IMG/VR virus record: IMGVR_UViG_3300046092_000062
Location: 62,001 to 126,000 of that record
Direction: 5' to 3' (one strand)
Length of the DNA: 64,000 nucleotides
Shown: positions 78-14,162 of the stretch, one piece after another
Position numbering within the stretch: the first letter of the stretch is position 1
How the letters are laid out: the number at the start of each line of letters is the position of its first letter
Notes under the pieces: generated by a model
Databases searched by the model: none
Seen by the model: the letters and a program-made list of their open reading frames with translations, nothing else
What the model was told of the DNA's origin: nothing
Translations under genes and position numbers: made by a program

Positions 78-249
78 AAATTTCATATCCTGTACGAACG
101 GCAGCTCTTGCTTTTCAGGATAATCTCGTGTAAAATGTTTAACACAAGAGAAGCTCTTAGCATCGGAATAAGTTCCGTTGCCGAGTTTAAGTAATTCATC
201 GAATCCAGGATTGGGTTTGCTCATACTGTATTTAACACAAGGAAACAAA

Positions 250-753
250 ATGCCCTGGATCCAAAACGTAGCACGTAGCGATGTCACTAAAGGGTTTCAC
301 ATCAACCCCGGTGATAACGCTATGTTGATTCAAATCGTTGACTGCGGCAGCGAATTTCCTACTCCCCTTTACAAGTTTAAAGAAGCTCATCAATTTGAGT
401 TTTTAGATGTAGAGGAAAAGGACTACGTTCTTGAAGAAGAAATGAAGTGCAGTCACGAACAAGCCGCAGAGCTAGTTCGTTTGTTGCAACATGCACTAGA
501 GAATCGCATGAACGTTATTGTTCATTGCCATGCTGGTGTTTGCCGCAGCGGTGCAGTATGTGAAGTTGGAGTCATGCTTGGCTTTGATGACACTGAAGCA
601 TTTCGTGCTCCTAACTTGCTAGTCAAGCATCGCATGATGAAGCAGCTGGGTTGGACGTATGATGAGAACGAAGAGCCAACGATCAATGGTCAACCATATC
701 AATACAGCGCAGGCGGGATCATTTTACCCCCAAGTCACGAAGGTGATATTTAA
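250..753 (+). CDS. Cys-dependent protein tyrosine/dual-specificity phosphatase
   Basis: HC-x5-R active-site loop VHCHAGVCRSG; start moved to ATG 250 after AAGGA RBS. Confidence 0.8.
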   Translation: MPWIQNVARSDVTKGFHINPGDNAMLIQIVDCGSEFPTPLYKFKEAHQFEFLDVEEKDYVLEEEMKCSHEQAAELVRLLQHALENRMNVIVHCHAGVCRSGAVCEVGVMLGFDDTEAFRAPNLLVKHRMMKQLGWTYDENEEPTINGQPYQYSAGGIILPPSHEGDI

Positions 754-1787: not shown

Positions 1788-1849
1788 TGTCATCCTAGAC
1801 CCCCGTATGGTCCTGGATGGCACGTAAAAGAAAAATATTTACGATCCAT

Positions 1850-1924
1850 CCACAGCAAACTTTGCTGGCGAAGTACCCGGCTCTTACCCGGACTAACAGA
1901 GTTCGATTCTCTGGCTGTGGACCA
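1850..1924 (+). tRNA. atypical tRNA-Lys(CTT)
   Basis: Acceptor CCACAGC/GCTGTGG + A + CCA; anticodon arm CCGG-ctCTTac-CCGG; canonical T-arm; A8-A9 instead of T8-A9 and odd D-loop. Confidence 0.7.
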
Positions 1925-1927
1925 TAT

Positions 1928-2002
1928 GGGGGTATAACTTAGCGGCTAAAGTATCTGGCTTTTAACCAGAGAACCAGAGTTCGATTCTCTGTGCCCCTAC
2001 CA
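1928..2002 (+). tRNA. tRNA-Lys(TTT)
   Basis: TCTGG-ctTTTaa-CCAGA anticodon arm, T-arm, CCA. Confidence 0.92.
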
Positions 2003-2127
2003 TATCAAAGTACGCTAGTGCATTATAGTGAATCAGGTCGCTCCTGTGGAAGCTAAAACTGCATCAATTGCCCTGGAGGGAAAGGTCGACGGCTGCGGTT
2101 CGATTCCGTAGCGTACTTTGATATGGT
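1999..2127 (+). ncRNA. long-stem tRNA-like element A
   Basis: Perfect 19-bp inverted repeat 1999-2017/2109-2127 with T-arm GCGG-TTCGATT-CCGT abutting the 3' strand. Confidence 0.55.
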
Positions 2128-2134
2128 AAGGCAT

Positions 2135-2212
2135 GGAAGTATAGCTCAGTTGGTTTAGAGCATCGGACTTTTAATCCGAGGGTCCTGGGTTCGAGCCCCA
2201 GTGCTTCTACCA
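2135..2212 (+). tRNA. tRNA-Lys(TTT), second copy
   Basis: TCGGA-ctTTTaa-TCCGA anticodon arm, T-arm, CCA. Confidence 0.92.
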
Positions 2213-2282
2213 TATGCAAACACATTTTTCTGAACGCCAGTCATTTGCCGTGCAGAGTAGGTCAAGTGTGTTTACATATGGT
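2209..2282 (+). ncRNA. long-stem element B
   Basis: 19-position stem 2209-2227/2264-2282 with one C.A mismatch. Confidence 0.5.
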
Positions 2283-2412
2283 ACTAGAAGGAGTAATTAA
2301 CCTTCGCCATAATCGGGAGTCATGACCCGATGAACTCGTAGTCTTCTAATTGGTTAGGAAAGGCCCGTTATGGGGCTTAATGTTGGTTCGAGCCCAACCT
2401 ACAATGAGTTCG

Positions 2413-2509
2413 CATATATAAACATACTAGTCGGCGACTAAGCGTATTGCACGGTCTCTACGGAGTGAAAGGGTCAGTGGTTCGATTCCACATAGTGTGT
2501 TTTTATATG
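2413..2509 (+). ncRNA. long-stem tRNA-like element C
   Basis: CATATA-T-AAACATACTA / TAGTGTGTTT-T-TATATG stem with T-arm GTGG-TTCGATT-CCAC. Confidence 0.5.
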
Positions 2510-2642
2510 GTGCAAAAGTAATAAAGGGACTTGGGTGCCCAGAGTTTTGAAAACTCACACACTATAGTCGGCATGTGTGTCCACCGTGCATTAACCGACG
2601 TTTAAATAAAGCTAGGGCAAGCGCCAGTTAACGGTGGAGCCT

Positions 2643-2756
2643 ATATAGAAGTATTCTTGGCATAAGTCAAAGCGGGAGAAGAAGCCTAGTATCTGCAGAT
2701 GCGAAAGTTTCAGAGCTTGACTCCTCCTATGCTTGCATTTGAGAGTGCTTCTATAT
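2643..2756 (+). ncRNA. long-stem element D
   Basis: 16-bp stem 2643-2658/2741-2756 (3 G-U) followed by GGTA like elements A and B. Confidence 0.4.
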
Positions 2757-2857
2757 GGTATAGTGTAATGCGAATGCACGGGATCGCCACATAAGCCTTT
2801 GACGAGCGGTGGAACAAGGTTCAGGTGTGGTAGGAACCCACAATGCCATTTAAATTT

Positions 2858-2933
2858 GCCTTTATAGCTCAGTTGGTAGAGCAGAGGATTGAAAATCCTT
2901 GTGTCACTGGTTCGAATCCGGTTAGAGGCACCA
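2858..2933 (+). tRNA. tRNA-Phe(GAA)
   Basis: Canonical cloverleaf, ttGAAaa loop, CCA. Confidence 0.95.
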
Positions 2934-2948
2934 AATTATAGGAGTAGT

Positions 2949-4172
2949 ATGGCAAAGTTTTCGGAGAAGTTCTTCTGTCCTGCACCGTGGACAATGTTAT
3001 ACTATCATGCCAACTCTCCTAGTCCGTGCCACATGATTAAAAATTTAGAGATGGAAGCGACCCCATCTGAATATTTTAATAGCGAATGGCTTAAGAATAT
3101 AAAACAAGAAATGCAGCAAGGGATTGTTCCTGCTGCATGTTCTGGTTGTAAAGAGCGTGAGAGTCATGGACTAAAAAGCACACGCGGCGCTATTTGGAAT
3201 TACTATAATGTAGGACCTGAGCCCGAGTACGAAGATCAATGGTTCGCAAACAAGTTTACCGCAGACAGCCCAACCGTTCCAAAAAGAATTGAGCTTAGGT
3301 TTAGTAATCTATGTAATATGAAATGCAGGATGTGCGACGAAACATCTAGTTCCAGCTTTGCAGCAGAAAAAATTGAACATAAGATTAAACCAGACAAAAA
3401 CGGAAGTCATCTTGAGCATAGCGTGATACCCATCACAAAGATAGAAAACAATTCAATTGATGGCCTCATGGATACTGCCTTTCTAGCGTCAGTTCGAAAG
3501 GTATGTTTAACCGGTGGCGAACCATTTTTAATAAAAGAATATTACAGCTATCTAGATTACTTAATAGACAACGGTTTTAACAAAACACTAGACGTAGAAT
3601 TGTTTACAAATTGCAGTGTATATAATCCATTGTTTATTGATCGACTTAGTAAATTTAAAACAGTTCAAATGGTGATGAGCATCGATGCTGTGGGCAAAGC
3701 GGCTGAATATATTCGTAGTGGAACCGATTGGCCTAAAGTGGAAGCCAATGTGCTTCGACTAAATCAACTAGCAGCTCCATTTAAAATGGAAGTTACAACT
3801 GCCATATCTGCATACAGCCTAATGGACTTTGCAGAGACTGCACGATTTCTAATGAGGTTGTACACCGAAAACAACACCATTGGCGTAAAATGTTACAACG
3901 TAACTTCGCCTCCGGGTATGCACTTTAATAATCTGCCTAAGCCGTTGAGAATACAAGCAATAGATCAAATCGACAAGGCAGTAGAGATTCTAACAGCACC
4001 AAACTATTTGGTACTAGTTACAGAGTTGTTAAACGTGAAACACGCATTGACTACTTCGTCCCCGGATACACCACTGGCATTCTTTGACTATACTAAGAAG
4101 TACGACACCATTAGGGGAGAGTCGTTTGCGGAAGTGTTTTTAACATCTCCTGACAGCACAGATTACTTGTAA
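2949..4172 (+). CDS. radical SAM protein with Cys-rich (twitch/SPASM-like) N-terminus
   Basis: CNMKCRMC (CxxxCxxC), LTGGEPF motif; start moved to ATG 2949 after GGAG. Confidence 0.88.
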   Translation: MAKFSEKFFCPAPWTMLYYHANSPSPCHMIKNLEMEATPSEYFNSEWLKNIKQEMQQGIVPAACSGCKERESHGLKSTRGAIWNYYNVGPEPEYEDQWFANKFTADSPTVPKRIELRFSNLCNMKCRMCDETSSSSFAAEKIEHKIKPDKNGSHLEHSVIPITKIENNSIDGLMDTAFLASVRKVCLTGGEPFLIKEYYSYLDYLIDNGFNKTLDVELFTNCSVYNPLFIDRLSKFKTVQMVMSIDAVGKAAEYIRSGTDWPKVEANVLRLNQLAAPFKMEVTTAISAYSLMDFAETARFLMRLYTENNTIGVKCYNVTSPPGMHFNNLPKPLRIQAIDQIDKAVEILTAPNYLVLVTELLNVKHALTTSSPDTPLAFFDYTKKYDTIRGESFAEVFLTSPDSTDYL

Positions 4173-5161
4173 AGGTTGGCCACATACACAATATGGTCAA
4201 TGGGGTGGTCTTTCCAATTATACACTGCTGGTAGATGATGTTTAATCTCCATAATTACAAACGCTTGCAGCAATGAATGGCTTCGTAGAAAATCTGTTAA
4301 CTTATAGGTTTTTCTAAATTGTTCAATTTCGCTAAACCATTGTAAGTTTTGCTGGGCATCAATGTATGTTTGGTGGAATGACTTTGTGTAACTAGTATCA
4401 AATGTGCCAGCCCCGATAGAGTTAACAAAATTGTCGAACCAAGTGGGAAATCGATCGCTAACAATATCAGTTAACGAGATCTGGTACAGGTGATCTATTC
4501 GGTCTTTGGGTAGTACATAGGTTTGTTCGTTAACTTCATGCCCGTTGTGTTGATTCCGTACACGATACCATTCAGAATACCATTCCAGCCCGCCGGATAA
4601 CTTATCATAGTCGATGCCTCTAAGGAATGGGAAAATTTCGTAATACGATTCAACAAACAAATTCCGCGCCTCAATAGAGTCTTGACAATTAAAACTATCA
4701 AACCCAAACCGACGTTCGACTATTTGATTCGCCTTAAAGAAAACAGGCCATTTGGTGATAGTATTTAATGATCCGTATTTGCGATCGTCGAGTACATCGT
4801 TATCATTGATAATAACAATAACTGGATCGGGATCACTTAATAGTATCGATCGGATAGCCATGTCCGGTCTTGACACATCAAAAGATGTTGGTATGTCATG
4901 ACAGTTGAGTAGAAAAACTTTTTTCTCTTTTGGTTGATTGTATGTCATCCAAATTAGATGTTGATGAATACTTTGATGAGTTGGTATTCTTGCGTGTAAG
5001 TGCGCAGTACCTATTCCTCCAAACATCTCACTAACTTCTTTGTTTACTGGATCATCAACGGTTTGACTAGCTGAGTCAATTTCACTTTTGTTGATGCACC
5101 AATGTATATAACTACCCGACGACCCCGGCGGGTATAATAGATAAATGTTCTTTGACAGCAT
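4163..5161 (-). CDS. hypothetical, sulfotransferase-like P-loop N-terminus
   Basis: MLSKNIYLLYPPGSSGSYI; start moved to 5161, TAAATA on minus strand at 5166-5171. Confidence 0.6.
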   Translation of the reverse strand: MLSKNIYLLYPPGSSGSYIHWCINKSEIDSASQTVDDPVNKEVSEMFGGIGTAHLHARIPTHQSIHQHLIWMTYNQPKEKKVFLLNCHDIPTSFDVSRPDMAIRSILLSDPDPVIVIINDNDVLDDRKYGSLNTITKWPVFFKANQIVERRFGFDSFNCQDSIEARNLFVESYYEIFPFLRGIDYDKLSGGLEWYSEWYRVRNQHNGHEVNEQTYVLPKDRIDHLYQISLTDIVSDRFPTWFDNFVNSIGAGTFDTSYTKSFHQTYIDAQQNLQWFSEIEQFRKTYKLTDFLRSHSLLQAFVIMEIKHHLPAVYNWKDHPIDHIVYVANLYK

Positions 5162-5182
5162 GGAATATTTATTGAAATAAAT

Positions 5183-5256
5183 GCTCTTATAGGTAAATGG
5201 TATATCGGCGCTGTGGTATAGCGCAGTCCTAAGTTCGATTCTTAGTAGGAGCACCA
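5183..5256 (+). tRNA. tRNA-Thr(GGT)
   Basis: Acceptor GCTCTTA/TAGGAGC, anticodon arm GCGCT-gtGGTat-AGCGC (unusual G32), CCA. Confidence 0.82.
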
Positions 5257-5271
5257 CGTGATAAGTATCTA

Positions 5272-6183
5272 ATGCAACATAATTTTTTACCATGTAAATA
5301 TCCAATTATTTGTGCCCCGATGAATAGAGTGTCGGACGTTAAGCTAGCACTTGCAGTTCATAGAGCTGGGTGCTTGCCGAGCCTTGTGGTCCACAATCAT
5401 GATGAATCTGAATTAGCTAACGATGTGGCTAAGATTGTGAACGAAATGAAAGAGTTCACAGAGCTGTCGGGATCAAGCGATTTTATACTTGCACTTAGAT
5501 CAGATTTTTTATTAAAAGATACCAAGCTGCTCCCTGCGATGTTAAAGTACAGGCCTGCGTATGTTGAATTCTTTGACAATATTGATTGGTCTGACATAAA
5601 GGTGGTCAACCTTATTAAGCTGCTTAGAACATACAGAATTAAAATAATCTATAAAATACTTGCACCTAGAATATTGGGCAAGTTAGTGGAATTTGTTGAC
5701 GCTATTGACGTTAAGGGCCCTGATGCCGCTGCCCGTGTGAATACCACAACTACTACTAGTTTAGTAGATCGGATTAAGCAACTGAAATCCGCTAATCCAC
5801 ATTTGCACATTATTGCATCTGGTGGTATGTCATCGCAACAGGATGTGCAGGCATGTATTGACGCTGGCGCAAGTGCAGTGGCATTGGGCACAGTATTTGC
5901 CATGTCAGAAGAGTCGTCGATTTCAGTTGAGACAAAAATGAAAATGATTGAATCAACATTCTCACAAGTTGTGAACATTGGCGAAGCCCAACAAAATGCG
6001 TTAGTGTTTACAAACGAAAAAGATGTTGACGGCAACCACACTGTGGGACTAGAACTTGGTATAAAAAGCCCAGTCGCTGGTCATGTGTTTGTGGGGAAAG
6101 CAATTGATTCAATTGACTCAATTAAAACAGTGGAAACAATCGTGTCGGAGCTAACTGGGGTAACTGATGCAAAAACCCGATGA
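5272..6183 (+). CDS. nitronate monooxygenase / FabK-like FMN TIM-barrel oxidoreductase
   Basis: YPIICAPM N-terminus, IIASGGM and AVALGTVF FMN-binding motifs. Confidence 0.75.
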   Translation: MQHNFLPCKYPIICAPMNRVSDVKLALAVHRAGCLPSLVVHNHDESELANDVAKIVNEMKEFTELSGSSDFILALRSDFLLKDTKLLPAMLKYRPAYVEFFDNIDWSDIKVVNLIKLLRTYRIKIIYKILAPRILGKLVEFVDAIDVKGPDAAARVNTTTTTSLVDRIKQLKSANPHLHIIASGGMSSQQDVQACIDAGASAVALGTVFAMSEESSISVETKMKMIESTFSQVVNIGEAQQNALVFTNEKDVDGNHTVGLELGIKSPVAGHVFVGKAIDSIDSIKTVETIVSELTGVTDAKTR

Positions 6184-7006
6184 TGTAACTATTTGTTACT
6201 TCGGGGGCAGCGGCGGCTTCTTTTGCTTGTACCTTCTTTTGCTTAGTAACCAATACCAATGCTGCTTCGAAAATGGGTCAGCTGACGCACACGTAACAAA
6301 AGTTACGCAATGGGATATACAGAATGTTTCCAATTGGAAAGATAATGAGATATGGCCTAACAACAGCAACACCAAAGCAGAGAGTTTCGATGTTAGCAAA
6401 GTCTTTTTTCTTTGTAACCCATTGCAATTAACGCAAAAGCCCGGAGTGCAAGATGACGTGCTATCTAAATGTCCAGGAAAGAAAATTCTATTGTACACAG
6501 ATTTAGAAACACAATGGCATCTAACAAAAACTAAACGTGCCTACTGGTTTCAAAAAGGACAGCAGCTAAACGGACAAGGACCAAGTTGGCAGACAGCCGA
6601 ATATCGTGAAGAACAAGTGCTAATATGGTATAATAACATCAGACAGGATAGCTGGCCTCAAATCTCCAAGGCAGATGATTTTTACAATCTTCCGCAGGAA
6701 ATACAGGATATTTGTATAACTGACTATAGCATGTGGGAAGTCCTTGACATTGGCAAATTTGACAATGATGACTACCGACCCCGTGGAGTAGAGTTTAGGG
6801 GAGACATAGTGTACAAGAAAGTAGTGGACATTATGCCTAAGATGGACATAGTGGTTAAGCTACAAGATTTGATTAAAACACAAGGCCGTGTGTTGTTCGA
6901 CCAGCTTGGTATTGAGACAAACAAAGACACGCAAAAGTTCATAATCCAGTACCTGTCGTTGCACACAGTCGAGCAGCGGAAATTCCTATTAGGCAAGCAC
7001 ATATAA
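6167..7006 (+). CDS. hypothetical, sulfotransferase-like P-loop N-terminus
   Basis: ICYFGGSGGFF; 279 aa. Confidence 0.55.
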   Translation: MQKPDDVTICYFGGSGGFFCLYLLLLSNQYQCCFENGSADAHVTKVTQWDIQNVSNWKDNEIWPNNSNTKAESFDVSKVFFLCNPLQLTQKPGVQDDVLSKCPGKKILLYTDLETQWHLTKTKRAYWFQKGQQLNGQGPSWQTAEYREEQVLIWYNNIRQDSWPQISKADDFYNLPQEIQDICITDYSMWEVLDIGKFDNDDYRPRGVEFRGDIVYKKVVDIMPKMDIVVKLQDLIKTQGRVLFDQLGIETNKDTQKFIIQYLSLHTVEQRKFLLGKHI

Positions 7007-7031
7007 TCAATTTGGCAACCAACTCATAATT

Positions 7032-8240
7032 ATGATTAATTTAAAACTAGGATATTACTCATGCAACGGAGTCACGTTCGATTCTAAGATTGCTGCATGT
7101 GTGTATTCTGTGCAGCACAATAACGCATTAGTTACGTGGACATTCAACGACCGAGAGTTTAATCAGCACAACTGGACACAAGAACCTGACCTAACACTGG
7201 ATCAATTGTATGATATTAGATCAAAGCAGCTAAGAGATCAGTACGACTATGTTATATTGAGCTACAGCGGCGGCGCCGACAGTCACAATATCCTAATGAG
7301 CTTTATTCGTCAAGGCCTCCATATAGACGAGATTGTGGTAAACACAACTGAGAAAGCTAGTGCAAGATTCACAGAGTTAGATAAAAACAATCTTGACCCC
7401 CGCAATGCAGGAGCAGAGCATGTGTTTCAGACGTTGCCTAGACTACGTGAAATTCAGGGATTGATCCCTAAAACAAAGATTAGTGTGTTGGATTTGTCGG
7501 ATCATCTATTTGAGAGTTTTTCAAAAGCCGATGATGCTAGCTGGGTATTAGAAAAGCGCGAAAGCCTAAACCCAGCTGGAGTAACACGGTTTAATTATCT
7601 GCACTTTGATCAATTGCGCAAACAGTTTGATAAAGATAAAAAAATTGCATTAGTGCTAGGAATCGAAAAGCCCAGGGTGTTTATTAGACACGGACAGTTG
7701 GTACTACGGTTTACAGACCGTGCGGCCAACATTGTTACTGTAGCAGAACACGTTAAAGAATACACAAATAGCACAGTAGAATTCTTCTACTGGAGTCCAG
7801 ATGCAGTGCCAGTGGTTATCAAACAAGCGCACACTATCAAGCGATGGCTTGAGGCTAATCCAGACAAACAGCATCTCTGGGACGTTGACACACTAACACC
7901 GGAGATGGTGAGACTAGTGCATGAGCGAGTGTACAGACCACTGCTATACACTACGTGGGACAACAGTTGGTGGCAATCAAACAAAGCAGTTAACGATTGG
8001 ACAAGCGAGTTTGACCAGTGGTTTAAGGATGGGTACAGTGATACTCGTGCTTACCAAGTGTGGGCAGAGGGTATTGAGTATGTTCGTGAAATTTTGCATC
8101 CTTACATAAACACTACTCATCTTGTTAATGGTCAAGCAGACGGCCTTGACATATTTGTTAAAGAGTACTTAATTGGACCAGTGAAAAATCTTTGTCCAGA
8201 ATTAAAGAATAAACTGTATAGGCATTTGCAAAATAAATAA
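7032..8240 (+). CDS. PP-loop (adenine nucleotide alpha hydrolase) family ATPase
   Basis: ILSYSGGADS PP-loop motif. Confidence 0.78.
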   Translation: MINLKLGYYSCNGVTFDSKIAACVYSVQHNNALVTWTFNDREFNQHNWTQEPDLTLDQLYDIRSKQLRDQYDYVILSYSGGADSHNILMSFIRQGLHIDEIVVNTTEKASARFTELDKNNLDPRNAGAEHVFQTLPRLREIQGLIPKTKISVLDLSDHLFESFSKADDASWVLEKRESLNPAGVTRFNYLHFDQLRKQFDKDKKIALVLGIEKPRVFIRHGQLVLRFTDRAANIVTVAEHVKEYTNSTVEFFYWSPDAVPVVIKQAHTIKRWLEANPDKQHLWDVDTLTPEMVRLVHERVYRPLLYTTWDNSWWQSNKAVNDWTSEFDQWFKDGYSDTRAYQVWAEGIEYVREILHPYINTTHLVNGQADGLDIFVKEYLIGPVKNLCPELKNKLYRHLQNK

Positions 8241-8273
8241 CTAGCGTGTATAATACACAGAAGGGACGATGCA

Positions 8274-8417
8274 ATGAAGTCAAGAGAGACAATCGAAAAG
8301 GCATACGGCAACGTCCCAAAAGAAATTGGGGTCACAGTTGATGTATTTAACTGGGTCCCGGAGTTTAGAGGTGTTAAGTATTACTGGATTCGTGCAGTAA
8401 GATTTTTCACCAGGTAA
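8274..8417 (+). CDS. small hypothetical protein (47 aa, below ORF-track cutoff)
   Basis: MKSRETIEKAYGNVPKEIG...; AAGGGA upstream; fills the gap before tRNA-Ser. Confidence 0.5.
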   Translation: MKSRETIEKAYGNVPKEIGVTVDVFNWVPEFRGVKYYWIRAVRFFTR

Positions 8418-8423
8418 GAATAC

Positions 8424-8514
8424 GGAGTGTGGGCAGGCCGGTAATGCAGCACCCTGCTAAGGTGTAGACTTGTGATGAGCAGGTCATAGGGTTCGATTCC
8501 CTAACACTCCGCCA
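8424..8514 (+). tRNA. tRNA-Ser(GCT)
   Basis: Long variable arm, ctGCTaa loop, G73-CCA. Confidence 0.93.
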
Positions 8515-8532
8515 GTGATAAGTAAGTATAAT

Positions 8533-8608
8533 GCGGATGTAGCTCAGCTGGTAGAGCACAACGTTGCCAACGTCGAGGTCGTCGGTTCGAACCCGATCAT
8601 CCGCTCCA
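8533..8608 (+). tRNA. tRNA-Gly(GCC)
   Basis: GCGGATG acceptor, ttGCCaa loop, T73-CCA. Confidence 0.95.
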
Positions 8609-8613
8609 TAAAT

Positions 8614-8690
8614 GGCTCTCTAGTTCCAATTGGCAGAACATCGGATTCCAAATCCGAGTGTTGGGGGTTCGAATCCCTCGGGGGTCGCCA
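8614..8690 (+). tRNA. tRNA-Trp(CCA)
   Basis: TCGGA-ttCCAaa-TCCGA arm, G73-CCA; D-stem GTTC/GAAC. Confidence 0.93.
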
Positions 8691-8695
8691 ATATA

Positions 8696-9145
8696 ATGAA
8701 ATCAAAATTCTCCGATTCCCAATTACGCACAATCACGAAAGTGGTTACATACCGCGTGATTATCACATGTAGTCACATCATCAATGGGTTTATTGTTAGT
8801 GGTAGTCTTGCTCTTGGATTGCAAATTGCAGGCCTAGCAGCAGTAATTAACAGTTTGTTATTTTGGCTACACGAGCGCATGTGGAATAGGCTACAATGGA
8901 AACGTCTCCATTTAAACAGTTCTACGTTCGTAGAAACCAATCCTAGAAGCATCAGTAAGATATTAACTTGGCGCATTTTCTCAATGTCTAGTAATTTTCT
9001 CATCCCTTACTTGATAACTGGATCATGGGGATCAGCAGCGGCATTCCTTGGGATAGCAGTAATAGTTAACATGGCTCTATACTATCTACATGAACGAGTG
9101 TGGAACATAGTTAAGTGGGGTAAACAGGTCAACGGCCTTTGGTGA
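8696..9145 (+). CDS. membrane protein with two tandem DUF2061-like repeats
   Basis: RTITKVVTYR...LHERMWNRLQW and RSISKILTWR...LHERVWNIVKW; start moved to ATG 8696. Confidence 0.72.
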   Translation: MKSKFSDSQLRTITKVVTYRVIITCSHIINGFIVSGSLALGLQIAGLAAVINSLLFWLHERMWNRLQWKRLHLNSSTFVETNPRSISKILTWRIFSMSSNFLIPYLITGSWGSAAAFLGIAVIVNMALYYLHERVWNIVKWGKQVNGLW

Positions 9146-9207
9146 AATGGATATCATATCTGTCTTCGAAACAGATGGTGGGAGTTCGATCCTCTCAAGG
9201 CCGACCA
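9133..9207 (+). tRNA. tRNA-Arg(TCG)
   Basis: CGGCCTT/AAGGCCG acceptor, TCTGT-ctTCGaa-ACAGA arm, CCA; overlaps last 13 nt of upstream CDS. Confidence 0.88.
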
Positions 9208-9213
9208 AAATAG

Positions 9214-9242
9214 TTGACTTAGTCAACGGCAGTGTGTATAAT
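9214..9242 (+). promoter_or_regulatory. sigma70 promoter
   Basis: TTGACT-17 nt-TATAAT. Confidence 0.75.
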
Positions 9243-9266
9243 ACAAACTGTTCATAAAAGAGTTAG

Positions 9267-9454
9267 CCATGAGCAAGGCAGCTTTCTGTTACCAGTGGTA
9301 GGCGTAGTATCAATAATCTTGCAATTAGTGGCCTGTGTTTAAGTATCGGGAACCCCCGAGGCAACAAAACGATTTTAAAATTGAGAACCGTTTCGAGCCC
9401 ACAACGTGTGGTCTAGGTAGGCATTCGCAAGATGCTGCTTGATCTAGATCATGG
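9267..9454 (+). ncRNA. unidentified structured ncRNA (about 190 nt)
   Basis: Nested stems 9267-9272/9449-9454, 9274-9282/9434-9441, 9316-9322/9427-9433, 9331-9335/9418-9422 plus internal hairpins; no ORF; own promoter. Confidence 0.5.
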
Positions 9455-9469
9455 TTGCCCATCTGATCA

Positions 9470-10105
9470 ATGGGGACCAAGTGGTCCGCGGTTGAAAAAC
9501 AGAATTACATGGCTAACCCTTTTATGAATACATTAACGTTTCAGACCCCGGTACGTATAGTTAATAACTGGGATAAAACCACACAAGTAGCAAAGCACTG
9601 CATCGATCTAGTAAAGAGTCAATCGGCCAGTATCACTAGGGAATACAAGTACAGCGATTACGGATATCACTATGAACTAGGATCAACTGGCACAGTTAGT
9701 CACATCACTAACGGTAGTGCAGAATGGTATTCAGTGACTGGTAAGCTAATAGAATCTACCATGCGCTTTTTGCCGCTAATGCTAGATGACCTAGCAGACC
9801 TTGACCCTACGTTTGCTAGCATTAACTACATGGTGGGCAATGGCGCAGAGCATAGGGATCACGAAAGTCAGCAAACTGGGTTCAATTATTTTTTTGCTGA
9901 TTGTGACAGCACTACCTACGCAAGAAACGCAGACATCTGCGAATCCTATCCTAGCGTAAAAGACACAGGGTGGATCCTTGATATCCAACAACTACACAGC
10001 ATCTCAAATACAAACGAACGCATTTGGTTTAACCTTAGATTTGGTAAACCCTTTGCATATTGCAGAGATTGGTTTGCAGATCATTTGGTATTAACTTATG
10101 AATAA
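9470..10105 (+). CDS. hypothetical, possible 2OG-Fe(II)/cupin oxygenase
   Basis: HRD...LHS facial-triad-like spacing. Confidence 0.5.
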   Translation: MGTKWSAVEKQNYMANPFMNTLTFQTPVRIVNNWDKTTQVAKHCIDLVKSQSASITREYKYSDYGYHYELGSTGTVSHITNGSAEWYSVTGKLIESTMRFLPLMLDDLADLDPTFASINYMVGNGAEHRDHESQQTGFNYFFADCDSTTYARNADICESYPSVKDTGWILDIQQLHSISNTNERIWFNLRFGKPFAYCRDWFADHLVLTYE

Positions 10106-11273
10106 AATTATCTCAATTGAGCCTGCAATCGATCCAGTCAATCGTCCTACATTTTTGTTGGACTGGGAACTAACAATGAAGTGCAATTTGGATTGCGACT
10201 ACTGCTCGACTGGCATTGAGTACGGTGGTCACGACAACAGCACAGCACATCCTCCTAAAGACGAATGCTTAAAAACCATTGACTTCATGTTTGCTTATGC
10301 AGACAAGTACATGCAGCTAAAGCCCAAATGGCAGCGCATGGTGGTTCTCAATGTATACGGCGGCGAAAGTATATTTCATCCAGACATTGTTGAGATCCTA
10401 GAGCAGGTGCGAGCAAGACACACATACGATTGGCCATTGACTGTTACCTGCACAAGTAACGCAGTGGCTGGTAAGAATCTTTGGGAAAAGGTTGCAAACT
10501 TAATTGATGAGTTTACCGTTAGTTTTCACAGCAGTGCATTGCCTAAACAGAGACAGCAAGTACTAGACAACATACTTTATAATAAGGCTATCGGCAGGCG
10601 CCAAAAGGTGGTGTTTGTGATGCACAACGATCCTGTTTTGTGGGATATTAGCCAACAAGCTATTGAGTTTTGTAAAACACACGATGTTAGGTATGTAGTT
10701 AAAGCAAACGACACCCCTACACCTCAGTGGCAGTATAACAAAGAACAGTTTATTTACTTTCAAGATTACTACAAGTCACGCACACCAGCTAAGAGTAGGG
10801 ATGCTCTAACAAAGGCGCTGGATGCAGTGGAAACTGACACAGTTGGCATGGGTAAGGTCGGTCGAGGTTGTTGTGGTGGCCGAAAGCTATGCACTAACCA
10901 AGACCTACAACACCCAACAGCCTTTGTACCACATGCAGATTTCATGGGTTGGAGTTGCAGTGTTAACTGGTACTTCTTGTACATTAAACAGATCAATGGC
11001 GATGTGTACACAAACAAGGATTGCCGTATGCGCTTTGATGGTACAGTTGGTCCAATTGGTAATTTGTCAAATGGTAATCTTATACTAGAACAAGTGCAGA
11101 AAAACATTGACAACAAAGCCATGCCTGTTATACAATGTGCTAGAACAAGATGTATATGCGGTTACTGTGCTCCAAAAGCGCAAGACCCAAAAGATTTTGA
11201 AGCTATTATGGATAAACACATAGTTGACAAGCAAGTCAAATTTGTTTATAATAACAGCTTAGATGATAAGTAA
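10098..11273 (+). CDS. radical SAM protein with Cys-rich C-terminus
   Basis: CNLDCDYC, YGGES; C-terminal CCGG..C, CSV, CARTRCICGYC. Confidence 0.88.
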   Translation: MNKIISIEPAIDPVNRPTFLLDWELTMKCNLDCDYCSTGIEYGGHDNSTAHPPKDECLKTIDFMFAYADKYMQLKPKWQRMVVLNVYGGESIFHPDIVEILEQVRARHTYDWPLTVTCTSNAVAGKNLWEKVANLIDEFTVSFHSSALPKQRQQVLDNILYNKAIGRRQKVVFVMHNDPVLWDISQQAIEFCKTHDVRYVVKANDTPTPQWQYNKEQFIYFQDYYKSRTPAKSRDALTKALDAVETDTVGMGKVGRGCCGGRKLCTNQDLQHPTAFVPHADFMGWSCSVNWYFLYIKQINGDVYTNKDCRMRFDGTVGPIGNLSNGNLILEQVQKNIDNKAMPVIQCARTRCICGYCAPKAQDPKDFEAIMDKHIVDKQVKFVYNNSLDDK

Positions 11274-11284
11274 TTTATCACAAT

Positions 11285-11368
11285 GCGTAAGTGGTGGAAT
11301 GGTATACACTCTGGTCTTAGAAGCCAGCGCCGCGAGGATTGAGAGTTCGAGTCTCTCCTTACGCACCA
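11285..11368 (+). tRNA. tRNA-Leu(TAG)
   Basis: Variable arm, ctTAGaa loop, A73-CCA. Confidence 0.93.
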
Positions 11369-11398
11369 TTTATTATTTTAAGTTTTTCTAAAAAGTGC

Positions 11399-11464
11399 TT
11401 GACACTTAATGAAACTCTTGTTATAATAGATACATGTTAAGAAATTAACAAACGTTCTTTAAAA
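11399..11464 (+). promoter_or_regulatory. consensus sigma70 promoter plus boxA-like antitermination site
   Basis: TTGACA(11399)-17-TATAAT(11422); CGTTCTTTAAAA at 11453-11464 resembles rrn boxA TGCTCTTTAACA. Confidence 0.8.
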
Positions 11465-11465
11465 A

Positions 11466-11750
11466 TTTGTTTTGATGTAAAGTAAGCAGGCGTACCACGC
11501 TAATAGGTTGCGTGACTCTTGTCGAAAATTTGGTCCAGATAGAAAGCTGGGAACTCTTGAGTAGTCTGTAAGCGGCTACTGTGGCGTCTAACACCTATGA
11601 GTTAGAAACGATCTGTTCCACGTAGCAATACGCAGGAAGAATGATTGCAATAGAGTAGAGTAACGCTCTACCGGTTGCATGAGGGTCAACTGAAAGACGC
11701 AAGTCTTACCCGTTACCTTGTAACCAGGTAAAAAGAGGCATCAAAATAAA
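11466..11750 (+). ncRNA. unidentified multi-hairpin ncRNA (285 nt)
   Basis: 12-bp closing stem 11466-11477/11739-11750; at least 6 internal hairpins, several with GNRA loops; no ORF. Confidence 0.6.
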
Positions 11751-11764
11751 TTTCTAAATAACTG

Positions 11765-11838
11765 TTGACAGCAAATGAAAAGTTTGCTACAATAGCAGCT
11801 TAGTTAGACATTGTGCTAACTAACAAAGTTCTTTAAAA
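11765..11838 (+). promoter_or_regulatory. sigma70 promoter plus boxA-like site
   Basis: TTGACA(11765)-17-TACAAT(11788); AGTTCTTTAAAA at 11827-11838. Confidence 0.8.
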
Positions 11839-11855
11839 TAGATACGTATAAGAAG

Positions 11856-11970
11856 TTCTTATACACATGCACATAAATGCGTAGGCCACGCAGATATGGT
11901 TGGATTCATAGCTTGGGCTATTGCCCAGGTTGGCAGGTTCGAAACCTGTGAGTGTGCAGTTGTATAAGAA
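11856..11970 (+). ncRNA. long-stem tRNA-like element E
   Basis: TTCTTATACA/TGTATAAGAA and TGCACAT/GTGTGCA stems, T-arm GCAGG-TTCGAAA-CCTGT, D-like and variable-like hairpins, no CCA. Confidence 0.5.
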
Positions 11971-11974
11971 TTTA

Positions 11975-12875
11975 GGGCAGTTTAATGTCCTGCAAAGAGT
12001 ATGGTTCGCCCAGCTTGATGCGAAGAATAACTGTGGTGACACAGCCAAAGGAGGTATGCCTACATAACTCCGCTAGCAATAGTTCATTTAGACAAGCCTG
12101 CTCACTCCTGTGAGGGAGCGTTCACTCAGCGACGGGTGGATGTAACAGTGACGCAAAGTGCATAGGGAAGAACGTTTGCTTACAAGCCTGAGATTGCATC
12201 AAGGGGAACTTGAGTAGATGGAAAGTAACAGGTGGTGCTGACTTCTATGCGAAACCAACTTTGTTAATTGGTATGAGAAAGGGTAGTGTATTGGTTCGAA
12301 GGGTTGCACCTAAGAGCTCGTATGCAGTTTTAGTGGTTGGTGGACGTAGTAATACGAACATTGGTCGCAAAAGACGACTGAGTAGCTCGCAAGGCAAAAG
12401 GTACGTGGTGTGTTGTATTGTGTATTCCAAAAGATTATGCAGCAACTGAGTCAGCACATCGCAGTAGGTTGATATAGTTCATTGGTAGAACATCTGTCTC
12501 TTAAACAGAATGCGGTGGGTTCAATTCCCACTATCATTACAAAACGCAAAGACTGACTCGGTCGTATGTGAAAAGCATCTAATACTTGAGCCGCAAGGTA
12601 ATCAAGTCAGACGTAACTCGCAAGGTGAAATCTGTTTATGCAGGAAGTTTCGTAGCTACTTAGCGGTGGTGAATGGCTCTAAAGGTCAACGGGATAGAAA
12701 GCGTAGAATAGCATACGGCGACAAGACTACTGCCTGTCTTTAAAAACGGCGATGCTGACAGCAGACTAGACTACTATGCAAATAGGGTTTAGTGGAAGTC
12801 GGAAGAAAGTAGACTCGCAAGGTTTACAATAATGTCCGAGGTGTTGTTAGGTTAGGATGTATTCTCAGTCCGCCA
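11975..12875 (+). ncRNA. probable GOLLD large ncRNA (about 900 nt)
   Basis: ORF-free, GNRA (GCAA/GAAA) hairpin-rich, inside a phage tRNA cluster; segments such as GAAAGTAACAGGTGGTGCTGAC and 3' TATTCTCAG match my recollection of GOLLD; ends approximate. Confidence 0.65.
12468..12539 (+). tRNA. tRNA-Lys(CTT)-like module embedded in the large ncRNA, no CCA
   Basis: D-arm GTTC-attggta-GAAC, anticodon arm TCTGT-ctCTTaa-ACAGA, T-arm GTGGG-TTCAATT-CCCAC; weak acceptor, ends ACAA. Confidence 0.7.
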
Positions 12876-12969
12876 ACTTATATGCAAACACATTAGTAAA
12901 AGTCTGTAAAAGGACGAAGCAACTGACTCTGTAATAGGAGCTGTTTGCTCAGTGTGTTTACATATAAGT
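12876..12969 (+). ncRNA. long-stem element F
   Basis: ACTTATATG-C-AAACACATT / AGTGTGTTT-A-CATATAAGT, nearly the same stem as element B. Confidence 0.55.
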
Positions 12970-13056
12970 ATGCTTTGATGGTTAAAGTTGGATAGGTAGT
13001 GGGTAGCTTGTGAAATCATAGTAGCAAGTCCACAGCAACCCAAACGGTAGAAGCAG

Positions 13057-13129
13057 CTTATTTGAAAGCACATTTGTTCCTGAAAGATTTTACGGTTTGG
13101 ATGGTTCAGCAAATGTGTTTCCAAATAAG
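13057..13129 (+). ncRNA. long-stem element G
   Basis: CTTATTTG-A-AAGCACATTTG / CAAATGTGTTT-C-CAAATAAG. Confidence 0.5.
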
Positions 13130-13224
13130 AATTTGGTGATTGTGTGGAGCTAAGGCGATTCGCTGGACTATGAAGCACGACGAGAGCGTTGAACTTGAAA
13201 TAGGTTCAACCACCAGACTAATAT

Positions 13225-13300
13225 GGACGGTTGGCAGAGCGTTTATGCGCCGGATTGCAAACTCGGTATAAGGTAGGTTAGACTCCTACACCGTCCTCCA
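13225..13300 (+). tRNA. tRNA-Cys(GCA)
   Basis: ttGCAaa loop, T73-CCA; non-canonical T-loop TTAGACT. Confidence 0.85.
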
Positions 13301-13595
13301 TTTTTGCTAGTTTTTTAAAACTAGTTGTGACGTATGGAGATGAGAGATTGCACCTCTAGTTAGCACTTGACACGCTTACTGGAATATTAATCGTGATCCA
13401 GTGACCCGAGTCCCCTGGCTTAATTGCCTTGTTTGTTGACTCTCGGAAATATTGGTATCCTCTGCTTGTTGTATTTTGCTTTAGAAAACAGTTGCCTTGA
13501 AAATCAATTATATCTAATGTACATTGCACATTGTCCCGCAATTGACTTGCCATACGTTGCACCCCTATTAAAATCAAACAGAAAGGAACTCGATT

Positions 13596-14162
13596 ATGAA
13601 ATTTACACTTCGCAAAGCAAACGCCCTACAAAACACAATCCAGGAACACATCAAGACGATCGACATCGCATTGACGGTTTCCCTTAACGAGTTCCAAAGT
13701 TCAACTTCGGTGCTTGGTACCGCACGTGAGACATTGGTCCGCAACGATGCCAAGCGCACACAGTTGACCAAGGCCTTGTACGCAGTCCGTGCAAAGGTTG
13801 GTCGCGCCAACACAGAAGCCGGTGTTGCAGATCTGTTGACAGACGCTGCATTCATTGACAAGCGTTTGGGCTTCTTAAAAGGCCTAACTGAAAGCAAGGT
13901 TGTCGAAGAAATCGCAGTCATTGAAGGCAAGCTAGAAAAGCTTCGCGCACAAGACAACAAGAACCGTGTTTACGGTTACAACGACACAGTTGACACTGGT
14001 GTGCTTGAAGCGGACCAGATTGAAGGTTACAAGGCAGAAATGCGTGACCTGAAGAAACAAAAGCAAAGCATTAATGACAAGGTCCTGGAACTTAACGTTC
14101 GCACCGAGATTGAGTTGGATGCAGATACCGTTTCTTTGCTACAGGCAGAGCAACTGGTATAA
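13596..14162 (+). CDS. hypothetical coiled-coil protein
   Basis: 188-aa ORF, AAAGGA RBS, strong codon bias. Confidence 0.75.
   Translation: MKFTLRKANALQNTIQEHIKTIDIALTVSLNEFQSSTSVLGTARETLVRNDAKRTQLTKALYAVRAKVGRANTEAGVADLLTDAAFIDKRLGFLKGLTESKVVEEIAVIEGKLEKLRAQDNKNRVYGYNDTVDTGVLEADQIEGYKAEMRDLKKQKQSINDKVLELNVRTEIELDADTVSLLQAEQLV

What the first reader, a model, noticed from the sequence alone, without database searches (positions are those of the whole stretch)
1999..13129. Family of seven long-stem elements, three with tRNA T-arms, dispersed through the tRNA island
Seen at 1999-2127, 2209-2282, 2413-2509, 2643-2756, 11856-11970, 12876-12969 and 13057-13129: 16-19 bp closing stems with an AT-rich outer half (CATAT/ATATG or CTTAT/ATAAG), often one mismatch about 8-10 bp in, and an inner AAACACA/TGTGTTT-like half, enclosing unrelated 40-90 nt interiors. 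In A, C and E a T-arm (TTCGA loop) stacks directly on the stem like an over-long acceptor stem with no CCA. Inference: a shared protein-binding or RNase III-type processing handle carrying variable cargo; conceptually like Y RNA tRNA mimics but with different geometry. I know no named family that fits.
Basis: partly seen in the sequence, partly recalled or inferred. Interest (0 to 1): 0.8.

Follow-up and report, generated by a model that had tools for sequence, protein, structure and literature searches.

The report
Conserved-stem hairpin RNAs beside phage tRNAs
The seven long hairpins are real and belong to a large, unnamed RNA family in the tRNA islands of uncultured freshwater giant phages: a nearly invariant 19-bp stem, starting at the CCA end of tRNA-Lys(UUU) or GOLLD RNA, encloses a changeable interior and is most likely a shared processing or binding handle.

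Summary
Observation confirmed and extended. All seven stems are at the stated coordinates. The window has nine closing stems with at least 14 of 16 Watson-Crick pairs, against 0-2 in shuffles. A covariance model built from relatives recovers exactly these seven in 15 kb: B, F, C and G strongly, A and E significantly, D marginally.

The stem of B and F recurs letter for letter in 56 stretches of IMG/VR phage contigs. I counted 117 distinct elements with 86 unrelated interiors. Twelve of 16 stem pairs covary. G-U outnumbers A-C 174 to 29 on the tRNA strand, so this is an RNA structure.

The stem starts at the discriminator and CCA of the upstream RNA. All 46 free-standing tRNA-Lys(UUU) genes carry it. 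In loci fetched without reference to the hairpin, 17 of 18 tRNA-Lys(UUU) carry it against 1 of 586 other tRNAs. In all 10 GOLLD loci checked it follows the GOLLD 3' end. The same interiors sit at different sites in different phages.

D and E have conserved, covarying interiors; E is a tRNA-like cloverleaf.

There is no Rfam match, no paper and no cultured phage.

Function is inferred: a precursor-RNA handle for double-strand processing or protein binding. No RNase III, Ro60 or RtcB gene was found among the ORFs scanned in the window.

The parts
1999..2128 (+). Element A: 16-18-bp perfect closing stem that starts at the discriminator and CCA (1999-2002) of tRNA-Lys(UUU) 1928-2002. The interior carries a T-arm abutting the 3' strand. 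Divergent member.
   Evidence: z -5.15; 25.7 bits, E 9e-4; not in the seed. Orthologues in L003 and L004 are 96% identical.
2208..2283 (+). Element B: core member. The stem starts at A2209-C-C-A2212 of tRNA-Lys(UUU) 2135-2212. C.A mismatch at the ninth pair.
   Evidence: z -5.55; 58.1 bits. Identical copies in L030 and L035.
2410..2512 (+). Element C: core member, with a 4-bp T-arm-like hairpin 1 nt from the 3' strand. It follows the tRNA-like unit X1.
   Evidence: 46.0 bits. The same interior sits directly behind tRNA-Lys(UUU) in L003 and L004.
2639..2760 (+). Element D: divergent member. The outer arm is of the family type and the inner arm has changed. The interior is conserved and structured.
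   Evidence: 15.9 bits, E 0.14; nine loci at 84-99% identity; six pairs with compensatory changes; conserved between anchors in four phages.
11857..11969 (+). Element E: tRNA-like cloverleaf (inner 7-bp stem, three arms, T-arm). Its leader and trailer pair in a 10-bp outer stem across a 2x2 internal loop. It lies between a promoter with a boxA-like box and the 5' end of GOLLD.
   Evidence: z -5.95; 21.6 bits, E 7e-3; 17 of 40 pairs compensatory; orthologues are called tRNA-Pro(UGG), 88-89 nt, by ARAGORN..
12876..12969 (+). Element F: core member with the same arms as B. It starts 1 nt after CCA 12873-12875 at the GOLLD 3' end.
   Evidence: 54.8 bits; the same junction in 10 of 10 GOLLD loci. 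The same interior lies behind a ...CACCA end in L002.
13056..13130 (+). Element G: core member with variant arms (ATTTGAAAGCACA paired with TGTGTTTCCAAAT).
   Evidence: z -4.82; 43.0 bits. Orthologue in L002, 95% identical.
1928..2002 (+). tRNA-Lys(UUU) copy 1. Its ACCA end forms the first four pairs of A.
2135..2212 (+). tRNA-Lys(UUU) copy 2. Its ACCA end forms the first four pairs of B.
11980..12875 (+). GOLLD RNA as seen in metatranscriptome contigs. The Rfam 3' domain is 12405-12871, with tRNA-Lys(CUU) 12468-12540 inside. It is flanked by E and F.
   Evidence: 198.8 bits; depth profile; adaptor-joined ends at 11980 in two runs; a match ending at 12875.
11765..11838 (+). Near-consensus promoter (11765-11793), a hairpin, and a boxA-like box GTTCTTTAAAA (11828-11838) upstream of E. 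This places E, GOLLD, F and G in one + strand transcript.

Best explanation
The elements act as RNA, in cis, within the long untranslated precursor transcripts of the phage's tRNA and ncRNA island.

Each is a 19-bp helix. Its 5' strand begins with the discriminator and CCA of the upstream RNA (tRNA-Lys(UUU), GOLLD, or a tRNA-like RNA). Its 3' strand ends in UGGU.

The helix has three parts: an A-U-rich outer 8 pairs, a usually mismatched ninth pair (C.A or A.C), and a nearly invariant inner 10 pairs (AAACACAUU paired with AGUGUGUUU).

I infer that this helix is a common handle read by a double-strand-specific factor. The factor would be an RNase III-type endonuclease, possibly guided by a sequence-specific dsRNA-binding protein.

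Cleavage near the mismatch would leave the upstream RNA with a short A-U-rich trailer. That trailer would melt and be trimmed back to CCA. The interior would be released as a small RNA closed by the 10-bp inner stem.

Shown here: the RNA-level structure; the sequence conservation; the junction with CCA; the specificity for tRNA-Lys(UUU) and for the GOLLD 3' end; and exchange of interiors between sites.

Inferred: that cleavage happens at all, which enzyme does it, and what the released interiors do.
For: Structure on the sense strand. Twelve of 16 pairs have changes on both sides, 97.6% of cells are paired, and 0 of 500 shuffles reach this. G-U outnumbers A-C 174 to 29 outside the mismatch position. 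The + strand scores 4-17 bits above the - strand for every element in the window.

All tRNAs, the promoters and the elements lie on one strand.

Junction with CCA. Forty-two of 123 instances abut a called tRNA, 32 of them tRNA-Lys(UUU), and 11 follow a GOLLD-type ...CCNCCA end. All 46 free-standing tRNA-Lys(UUU) genes have a stem of at least 15 of 18 pairs starting at CCA. In loci fetched independently of the hairpin, 17 of 18 tRNA-Lys(UUU) carry it against 1 of 586 other tRNAs. GOLLD ends 4-8 nt before the hairpin in 10 of 10 loci.

RNA ends. In four metatranscriptomes the abundant GOLLD RNA runs from about 11980 to 12875, between E and F. Depth on E, on the second half of F and on G is near zero.

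The neighbouring 290-nt RNA has its own 20-bp closing stem. Its abundant contigs begin at 11464 and end at 11753. Those two positions pair with each other in the predicted stem, as expected after a cut across a helix.

Operon context resembles rRNA operons: near-consensus promoters followed by a hairpin and a boxA-like box.
Against: No cleavage of these hairpins was observed.

The read data are assembled contigs from relatives at least 90% alike. They have no strand information. tRNA-sized RNAs are poorly captured: tRNA-Cys has depth 0-4.5. So the low depth on E, F and G does not prove removal. One RNA contig runs on for about 300 nt past 12875 into sequence unlike the window.

No RNase III gene or other candidate reader was found in the window ORFs scanned.

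RNase III alone does not explain an almost invariant stem sequence.

Most tRNAs in the same arrays mature without such a hairpin. A general processing need therefore does not explain the tie to tRNA-Lys(UUU).

A has no mismatch in its stem. The GOLLD 5' end lies 10 nt outside E rather than inside its stem.
Confidence: 0.4

Rival explanations
1. Ribonucleoprotein scaffold, in the manner of Y RNA. The conserved stem is the docking site of a phage protein, and the variable interior is an adaptor or effector module. Candidates are the 'Ro-like' DUF2828 plus vWA-like protein found in many related tRNA islands, or one of the unknown island proteins. The elements would then accumulate as stable 70-130-nt RNAs.
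For: The size, the closing stem made from both ends, the conserved non-Watson-Crick position, the variable interior and the occasional T-arm all match the general description of Y RNAs in PMC4201824.

The stem sequence is conserved beyond what pairing alone needs.

Seven hairpin loci carry a DUF2828+DUF7788 gene. Fourteen of 80 loci fetched through that gene have hairpins 2-6 kb upstream on the same strand.

Depositors name homologues in mycobacteriophages 'Ro-like RNA binding protein'. No known Y RNA was found beside the gene in L090.

D and E interiors are under structural selection.
Against: The protein is absent from the 64-kb window. The window's contig is not among the best 80 of 216 relatives.

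Ro60 likeness was not shown here. PDB sequence searches found nothing. Only one of 22 members gave a weak vWA_Ro60 hit, E 0.059.

The Y RNA models in Rfam do not match.

In Citrobacter phage Ci1 a tRNA-like RNA next to the gene is the more obvious partner.

The complex prediction was not run by the tool.
Confidence: 0.2
2. CCA-masking 'pro-tRNA' device. The hairpin keeps the 3' ACCA of phage tRNA-Lys(UUU), and of GOLLD, base-paired until a timed or triggered cut. It would act as storage or as protection against host nucleases or transferases that attack tRNA ends or tRNA-Lys.
For: The tie to tRNA-Lys(UUU) is near obligate and exclusive. The first four pairs are the discriminator and CCA with UGGU, and they covary with context.

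The window holds four tRNA-Lys genes. Related islands carry RNA-repair-type genes: an RNA ligase 1 family protein, a P-loop kinase and a metallophosphoesterase.

From my own knowledge, not tested here: tRNA-Lys(UUU) is the target of the PrrC and RloC anticodon nucleases, and T4 counters PrrC with Pnkp and Rnl1.
Against: This is entirely inferential. Many family members follow RNAs that have no CCA (contexts CT/AG and CTT/AAG). It does not explain the conserved inner stem or the structured interiors. No defence or trigger has been identified.
Confidence: 0.12
3. DNA-level element. The arms are terminal inverted repeats or recombination sites of a mobile cassette, in the manner of a MITE or an integron attC site, that shuffles small RNA genes among phages.
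For: Twelve interior classes occur in two or more different flank contexts. Whole units of element plus spacer are present or absent between conserved anchors in related phages. The junction CCATATGG between the first two tRNA-Lys genes looks like an empty site. HNH endonuclease genes lie in related arrays.
Against: Orientation relative to transcription is fixed, and G-U greatly exceeds A-C on the sense strand.

Occupancy at tRNA-Lys(UUU) is 46 of 46, which is not the pattern of sporadic insertion.

The flanks beyond ATAT are complementary rather than directly repeated.

No long version with an ORF between the arms was found.

Exchange of interiors is explained just as well by homologous recombination within the identical arms.
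Confidence: 0.1
4. No specific function. The elements are decayed tRNA genes or neutral structured spacers that merely keep neighbouring RNAs from misfolding or from Rho-dependent termination.
For: Some interiors keep a T-arm. E orthologues are still called tRNA by ARAGORN. Interiors are mostly unrelated.
Against: The stem sequence is nearly invariant across phages whose neighbouring radical SAM protein is only 51% identical and whose tRNA-Lys genes have a median identity of 83%. The specificity for tRNA-Lys(UUU) argues against neutrality. D and E interiors covary. The tRNA model does not hit A, C or E at E up to 10.
Confidence: 0.08

Closest known systems
RNase III processing stalks (flanks of 16S and 23S rRNA in rrn operons; phage T7 early-RNA sites). 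From my own knowledge.
   Same: A long helix in an untranslated polycistronic precursor, often with an internal mismatch near the cut. It sits downstream of a promoter with boxB/boxA-type antitermination signals. It releases stable RNAs, and the leftover stem halves are trimmed.
   Different: Here each hairpin is self-contained rather than formed by the two flanks of the product. Its sequence is nearly invariant. It begins exactly at a CCA end, is tied to one tRNA species, and carries a variable interior. Cleavage has not been shown.
Y RNAs and bacterial YrlA (Ro60/Rsr partners; PMC4201824)
   Same: Length of 80-130 nt. A conserved stem made from the 5' and 3' ends. A variable interior that can mimic tRNA, including a T-arm. 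Found in phages and next to RNA-repair genes.
   Different: The stem does not resemble the GNCGAA-type Rsr-site motif described in that paper. There is no Rfam match. No TROVE gene lies beside the elements in this window. Where a T-arm is present it stacks on the closing stem, so the closing stem takes the acceptor position instead of replacing another arm.
Phage T4 stable RNAs C and D (species 1 and 2 RNAs; NC_000866 70908-71171)
   Same: Small non-tRNA RNAs of unknown function, co-located with the phage tRNA cluster immediately after a tRNA. RNA C has a T-arm next to its terminal stem.
   Different: The family model does not match them. They have no long conserved closing stem, are single-copy, and do not begin within the CCA.
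Functional RNAs cut out of tRNA spacers (E. coli 3' external transcribed spacer of leuZ; murine gammaherpesvirus 68 tRNA-miRNA transcripts). From my own knowledge.
   Same: A tRNA and a downstream hairpin RNA are made as one transcript. The tRNA's 3' processing sets the 5' end of the hairpin RNA.
   Different: Different organisms and enzymes. Those cases have no shared conserved stem across many cargoes and no pairing with the CCA.
Integron attC sites and REP-type palindromes (DNA-level hairpins; attC as summarised in PMC5737381)
   Same: Imperfect inverted repeats with a conserved non-paired position, a variable centre, and cassette-like exchange.
   Different: No cassette ORFs and no integrase. 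Fixed orientation with transcription. A G-U bias that points to RNA. The conserved core is unlike the attC R-boxes as I recall them.

Membership tests
Any Rfam 15 family | Covariance-model match at or near the gathering score | tested here: not met
   Only tRNA and GOLLD pass. The sole hit on an element is a miRNA model on the - strand of B, 24.6 bits against a gathering score of 100.
Y RNA / YrlA | Gene lies next to a Ro60/Rsr (TROVE) gene | tested here: not met
   No TROVE hit among the window ORFs scanned. The DUF2828 'Ro-like' protein of relatives is absent from the window. The rest of the 320-kb genome was not seen.
Y RNA / YrlA | Conserved Rsr-binding stem motif and a match to the YrlA or Y RNA model | tested here: not met
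   The stem consensus (ATAT, two variable bases, AAACACATT) does not resemble the GNCGAA-type motif cited in PMC4201824. No Y RNA or YrlA model hit at E up to 10.
Y RNA / YrlA | Long stem from the 5' and 3' ends plus a variable or tRNA-like interior, 80-130 nt | tested here: met
   This is a resemblance in form only.
Ordinary or decayed tRNA | Cloverleaf recognised by a tRNA model, with a 7-bp acceptor stem and an encoded CCA as in the phage's other tRNAs | tested here: not met
   ARAGORN and the Rfam tRNA model call none of the seven. Only E is cloverleaf-like. Its orthologues are called tRNA-Pro(UGG) with a long variable arm, but E has no encoded CCA and the window copy has an 8-nt loop.
RNase III substrate | About two turns of dsRNA, often with an internal loop at the cut | tested here: met
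   19 pairs with a mismatch at the ninth. This shows geometry only.
RNase III substrate | Staggered cleavage of both strands by RNase III | not testable with these tools
   Needs an enzyme assay or end mapping. One search gives only indirect contig ends, on neighbouring RNAs.
MITE or insertion-sequence derivative | Direct target-site duplication, sporadic occupancy, and an autonomous copy with a transposase | tested here: not met
   The flanks are complementary, not direct repeats. Occupancy is 46 of 46 at tRNA-Lys(UUU). No ORF-bearing version was found.
T4 RNA C / RNA D | Sequence and structure homology | tested here: not met
   Model R1 gives nothing above 9.6 bits on the T4 tRNA region.
This hairpin family itself (model R1) | Match to the 88-position, 16-pair model built from 60 relatives | tested here: met
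   B, F, C and G score 43-58 bits (their copies from L001 were in the seed). A scores 25.7 and E 21.6 bits, both significant and neither in the seed. D scores 15.9 bits, E 0.14, which is inconclusive.

The most novel reading that the evidence does not exclude
The hairpins could be a phage-wide system of 'handled' small RNAs. In this reading one invariant double-stranded handle obligately caps the CCA end of phage tRNA-Lys(UUU) and of the GOLLD nanocage RNA. The handle is read by a dedicated phage protein, for example the Ro-like DUF2828-vWA protein or an unknown island protein. Its exchangeable interiors form a fast-evolving library of decoys or adaptors used in the conflict over tRNA cleavage and repair.
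Probability: 0.12. Interest if true: 0.85.

Novelty: new variant of a known kind. Interest (0 to 1): 0.7.

Why it matters
Giant phages carry tRNA islands whose non-tRNA content is largely unexplored. Phage T4's RNAs C and D, which sit in its tRNA cluster, are annotated only as small stable RNAs, and to my knowledge their function is still unknown.

This family is abundant, strongly supported by covariation, and has precise anatomical rules. It starts at CCA, it always follows tRNA-Lys(UUU), and it follows GOLLD. That makes the maturation of phage tRNA precursors and of GOLLD directly testable.

If the handle is a processing or protein-docking signal, it is also a natural, portable cassette for expressing small structured RNAs. 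The near-exclusive tie to tRNA-Lys(UUU), together with RNA-repair-type genes in related islands, hints at a link to tRNA-targeting host defences.

Tried and rejected
Rfam at gathering and at E up to 10: no family.

GenBank phages by megablast and blastn: no cultured relative, only chance hits. The tRNA region of Xanthomonas phage Xoo-sp13 and the island of Citrobacter phage Ci1 have no R1 match. Ci1 does have an unrelated hairpin that starts in the CCA of its tRNA-Lys.

Bacterial and archaeal genomes: true members occur only on tRNA-array contigs binned into freshwater MAGs. The other hits are unrelated perfect hairpins. No host was learned.

Pfam, PHROGs and NCBIfam on the island ORFs and on the larger ORFs elsewhere in the window: no RNase III, RtcB, TROVE or ligase.

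Orphan arms and long arm-bounded elements: none with an ORF.

T-arm as a family feature: rejected, 4 of 117.

Ro60 likeness of the DUF2828 protein: not settled.

The protein-RNA complex prediction was not folded by the tool and is not evidence.

ESM Atlas on the conserved 188-aa island protein: uninformative.

Literature searches found no description of the family.


Full report
**Source and setting.** The window is part of IMG/VR contig IMGVR_UViG_3300046092_000062, 320,767 bp. Locus L001 matches it at 100%. The DNA occurs in freshwater and wastewater metagenomes. No GenBank phage is close. The first 15 kb hold 16 tRNA genes, all on the + strand. They also hold a GOLLD RNA (RF02032, 198.8 bits, 12405-12871) with tRNA-Lys(CUU) embedded. 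Several near-consensus sigma-70-type promoters lie on the + strand. Genes that may act on tRNA or in translation are present: twitch-type radical SAM proteins, a cytidine/tRNA-type deaminase and an RF-1-domain protein.

All seven stems are present as described. A scan for closing stems with at least 14 of 16 Watson-Crick pairs at spans of 50-170 nt finds nine loci in 64 kb, against 0-2 in twelve dinucleotide shuffles. Seven of the nine are the reported elements or cross-pairs of their near-identical arms. B and F have identical arms, including a C.A mismatch.

**It is a large family.** The exact arms of B and F, with a gap of 35-65 nt, occur in 56 stretches of IMG/VR contigs. These carry 39 different interiors. 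With up to four arm mismatches I found 174 instances and 117 distinct sequences in 66 loci plus the window. By shared 11- or 12-mers the interiors fall into 86 classes.

A covariance model (R1; 60 seeds, 88 positions, 16 pairs) gives 250 matches at E up to 0.001 in 0.7 Mb. B, F, C and G score 43-58 bits. A scores 25.7 bits (E 9e-4), E 21.6 (E 7e-3) and D 15.9 (E 0.14). For every element the + strand scores 4-17 bits higher than the - strand. A, D and E are therefore divergent relatives.

**Anatomy of the stem.** The three outermost pairs follow the context: C-G or U-A, with A-U at the third.

- Four pairs A-U, U-A, A-U, U-A come next.
- One freely covarying pair follows: G-C 51, A-U 40, U-A 19.
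- One position is usually not Watson-Crick: C.A 47, A.C 19, against 35 Watson-Crick.
- Seven nearly invariant pairs follow (AAACACA with UGUGUUU).
- Then a pair that is U.G in 73 cases, C-G in 23 and U-A in 11.
- One or two further pairs close the stem.

On the model alignment 12 of 16 pairs change on both sides and 97.6% of cells pair. No shuffle out of 500 and no slid register comes close. Outside the mismatch position G-U outnumbers A-C 174 to 29 on the tRNA-sense strand. That bias, the fixed orientation and the strand asymmetry of the model scores point to an RNA structure on the transcribed strand.

**Where it sits.** In B and A the first four pairs are the discriminator and CCA of the preceding tRNA-Lys(UUU), paired with UGGU. 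Across loci, 42 of 123 distinct instances abut a called tRNA. Thirty-two of those are tRNA-Lys(UUU). Eleven follow a ...CCNCCA end. Many of the rest follow ends of the NCCA type. Thirty-seven have a tRNA within 15 nt downstream.

The association was then tested on loci fetched without reference to the hairpin. In 80 loci found through an unrelated protein, 11 of 11 tRNA-Lys(UUU) and none of 426 other tRNAs are followed by the element. In nine loci found through the radical SAM protein the figures are 6 of 7 tRNA-Lys(UUU) and one tRNA-Asn.

Over all loci, 46 of 48 distinct tRNA-Lys(UUU) genes have a stem of at least 15 of 18 pairs starting at CCA. The two exceptions are copies embedded in GOLLD. 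The 46 carry 34 interior classes.

The ...CCNCCA contexts are GOLLD 3' ends. In 10 of 10 loci the Rfam GOLLD match ends 4-8 nt before the hairpin. That sample was chosen for having hairpins. In the window CCA is at 12873-12875 and F starts at 12876.

**Interiors.** Most are unrelated, but they are not all junk.

D is conserved at 84-99% identity in nine loci and has six compensatory pairs.

E is conserved upstream of GOLLD in several phages and has 17 of 40 compensatory pairs. It forms an inner 7-bp stem, three arms and a T-arm. A 2x2 internal loop and a 10-bp outer stem are made from its leader and trailer. ARAGORN calls the orthologues in L003, L004, L019, L028 and L035 tRNA-Pro(UGG) of 88-89 nt. 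The window copy has one extra U in that loop and is not called. E has no encoded CCA.

A strict T-arm occurs in only 4 of 117 elements, against 0.3 expected.

Twelve interior classes occur behind two or more different flanks, with the outer pairs adapted to each site. For example, F's interior lies behind a ...CACCA end in L002. Another interior is found after tRNA-Lys, after GOLLD and before tRNA-Glu in three different phages. Between conserved anchors, related phages differ by whole units of element plus spacer. Recombination within the identical arms explains this. No arm-bounded element with an ORF exists in the data.

**RNA evidence.** I laid the assembled contigs of four freshwater metatranscriptomes on 11300-13400 at 90% likeness.

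- Depth is high on 11442-11796 and on about 11980-12875.
- Depth is near zero on the promoters, on E, on the second half of F and on G.
- Adaptor-joined contig ends lie at 11980 in two runs.
- One match ends at 12875.

The strongly uneven profile argues for RNA rather than DNA carry-over.

The caveats are serious. The contigs come from relatives and carry no strand information. tRNA-sized RNAs are barely captured. One contig continues past 12875 into unlike sequence.

The upstream 290-nt RNA has its own 20-bp closing stem. The abundant contigs begin at 11464 and end at 11753. Those positions are partners in that stem, as expected after a cut across a helix.

Both promoters, at 11399 and 11765, are followed by a hairpin and the box GTTCTTTAAAA. 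This resembles the boxB-boxA antitermination signals of rRNA operons (my own knowledge).

**Candidate readers.** The window ORFs scanned (the island ORFs and the larger ORFs elsewhere) show no RNase III, RtcB, TROVE or ligase. The remaining 256 kb of the genome were not available.

In related hairpin loci the commonest neighbouring proteins, out of 56 contigs, are:

- a cysteine-phosphatase-fold protein (window 178-753): 26 contigs;
- an unknown 188-aa protein (window 13596-14162): 21;
- a metallophosphoesterase: 18;
- a P-loop kinase: 10;
- an RNA ligase 1 family protein: 8;
- a DUF2828+DUF7788 protein: 7.

The DUF2828+DUF7788 protein has 702 homologues in cultured phages. Some depositors name them 'Ro-like RNA binding protein'. 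I could not verify a Ro60 fold. The complex prediction was not run by the tool.

**Interpretation.** Shown here: an RNA helix of conserved sequence, fused to the CCA end of specific upstream RNAs, carrying exchangeable interiors of which some are structured RNAs.

Most likely (0.4): it is a common handle in the precursor, read by a double-strand-specific nuclease and perhaps a sequence-specific partner. That would free the upstream 3' end and release the interior as a stem-closed small RNA.

Rivals: a Y-RNA-like scaffold (0.2), a CCA-masking device for tRNA-Lys(UUU) (0.12), a DNA-level cassette (0.1), and neutral spacers or decayed tRNAs (0.08).

**Novelty.** No Rfam family, no paper in the searchable library and no cultured phage carries it. 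In kind it is nearest to processing stalks and to spacer-derived or tRNA-cluster small RNAs. The invariant handle, the CCA junction and the tie to tRNA-Lys(UUU) and GOLLD are new.

Noticed in passing
window 11440-11760 (abundant RNA about 11464-11753): An unnamed RNA of about 290 nt lies behind a perfect consensus promoter (11399-11427). It is very abundant in lake metatranscriptomes and 89-94% conserved in nine loci. It has a predicted 20-bp A-U-rich closing stem of its own and no Rfam match.
   Followed up: partly
window 11440-11464 and 11806-11838: Both ncRNA promoters are followed by a small hairpin and the identical box GTTCTTTAAAA (11454-11464 and 11828-11838). This resembles the boxB and boxA antitermination signals of rRNA operons. 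It is conserved in L002, L003 and L005.
   Followed up: partly
window 2284-2411: Unit X1 between B and C is a conserved tRNA-like RNA, 77-93% identical in ten loci. It has a 6+4-bp terminal stem, two arms and a T-arm, with nine compensatory pairs. No tRNA finder calls it. In several phages a family hairpin follows it.
   Followed up: partly
window 2560-2640, 2759-2857 and 13130-13224: Further conserved non-coding blocks lie between the hairpins and tRNA-Phe or tRNA-Cys. These are the 3' part of X2, X3 and X5, at 80-100% identity in relatives. Their nature is unknown.
   Followed up: no
window 1850-2212 and 12468-12540: There are four tRNA-Lys genes: CUU, UUU and UUU in a row, plus CUU inside GOLLD. 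Related islands carry an RNA ligase 1 family protein, a P-loop kinase and a metallophosphoesterase. This suggests pressure on tRNA-Lys, as from anticodon nucleases.
   Followed up: partly
window 11857-11969; L003:16145-16232: E orthologues are called tRNA-Pro(UGG) with a long variable arm and no encoded CCA. The window copy has an 8-nt anticodon-like loop. This is either an odd tRNA or a tRNA mimic placed exactly upstream of GOLLD.
   Followed up: partly
window 1799-1933: A 15-bp pairing (14 of 16 Watson-Crick) encloses tRNA-Lys(CUU). Its 3' strand consists of that tRNA's GGACCA end, the TAT spacer and the first bases of the next tRNA. It may be an alternative precursor structure or chance.
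   Followed up: no
L006:15034-16461 and 216 relatives; L171:11977-13377 and 13988-14101: A DUF2828 plus vWA-like protein, named 'Ro-like RNA binding protein' in some GenBank phages, is common in phage tRNA islands. In Citrobacter phage Ci1 a 114-nt tRNA-like pseudo-tRNA lies just downstream of it, which makes it a candidate partner RNA.
   Followed up: partly
L171:1780-1840 (Citrobacter phage Ci1): In this cultured T4-like phage the tRNA-Lys is also followed by a two-tier hairpin whose stem starts in the CCA. It is unrelated in sequence to the family. The arrangement may be more general than the family itself.
   Followed up: no
window 2889-4172, 10098-11273 and 48993-50021: Three radical SAM proteins are encoded. 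One is a twitch-domain type scoring 277 bits against NF033640. Two of the three are embedded in the tRNA island.
   Followed up: no
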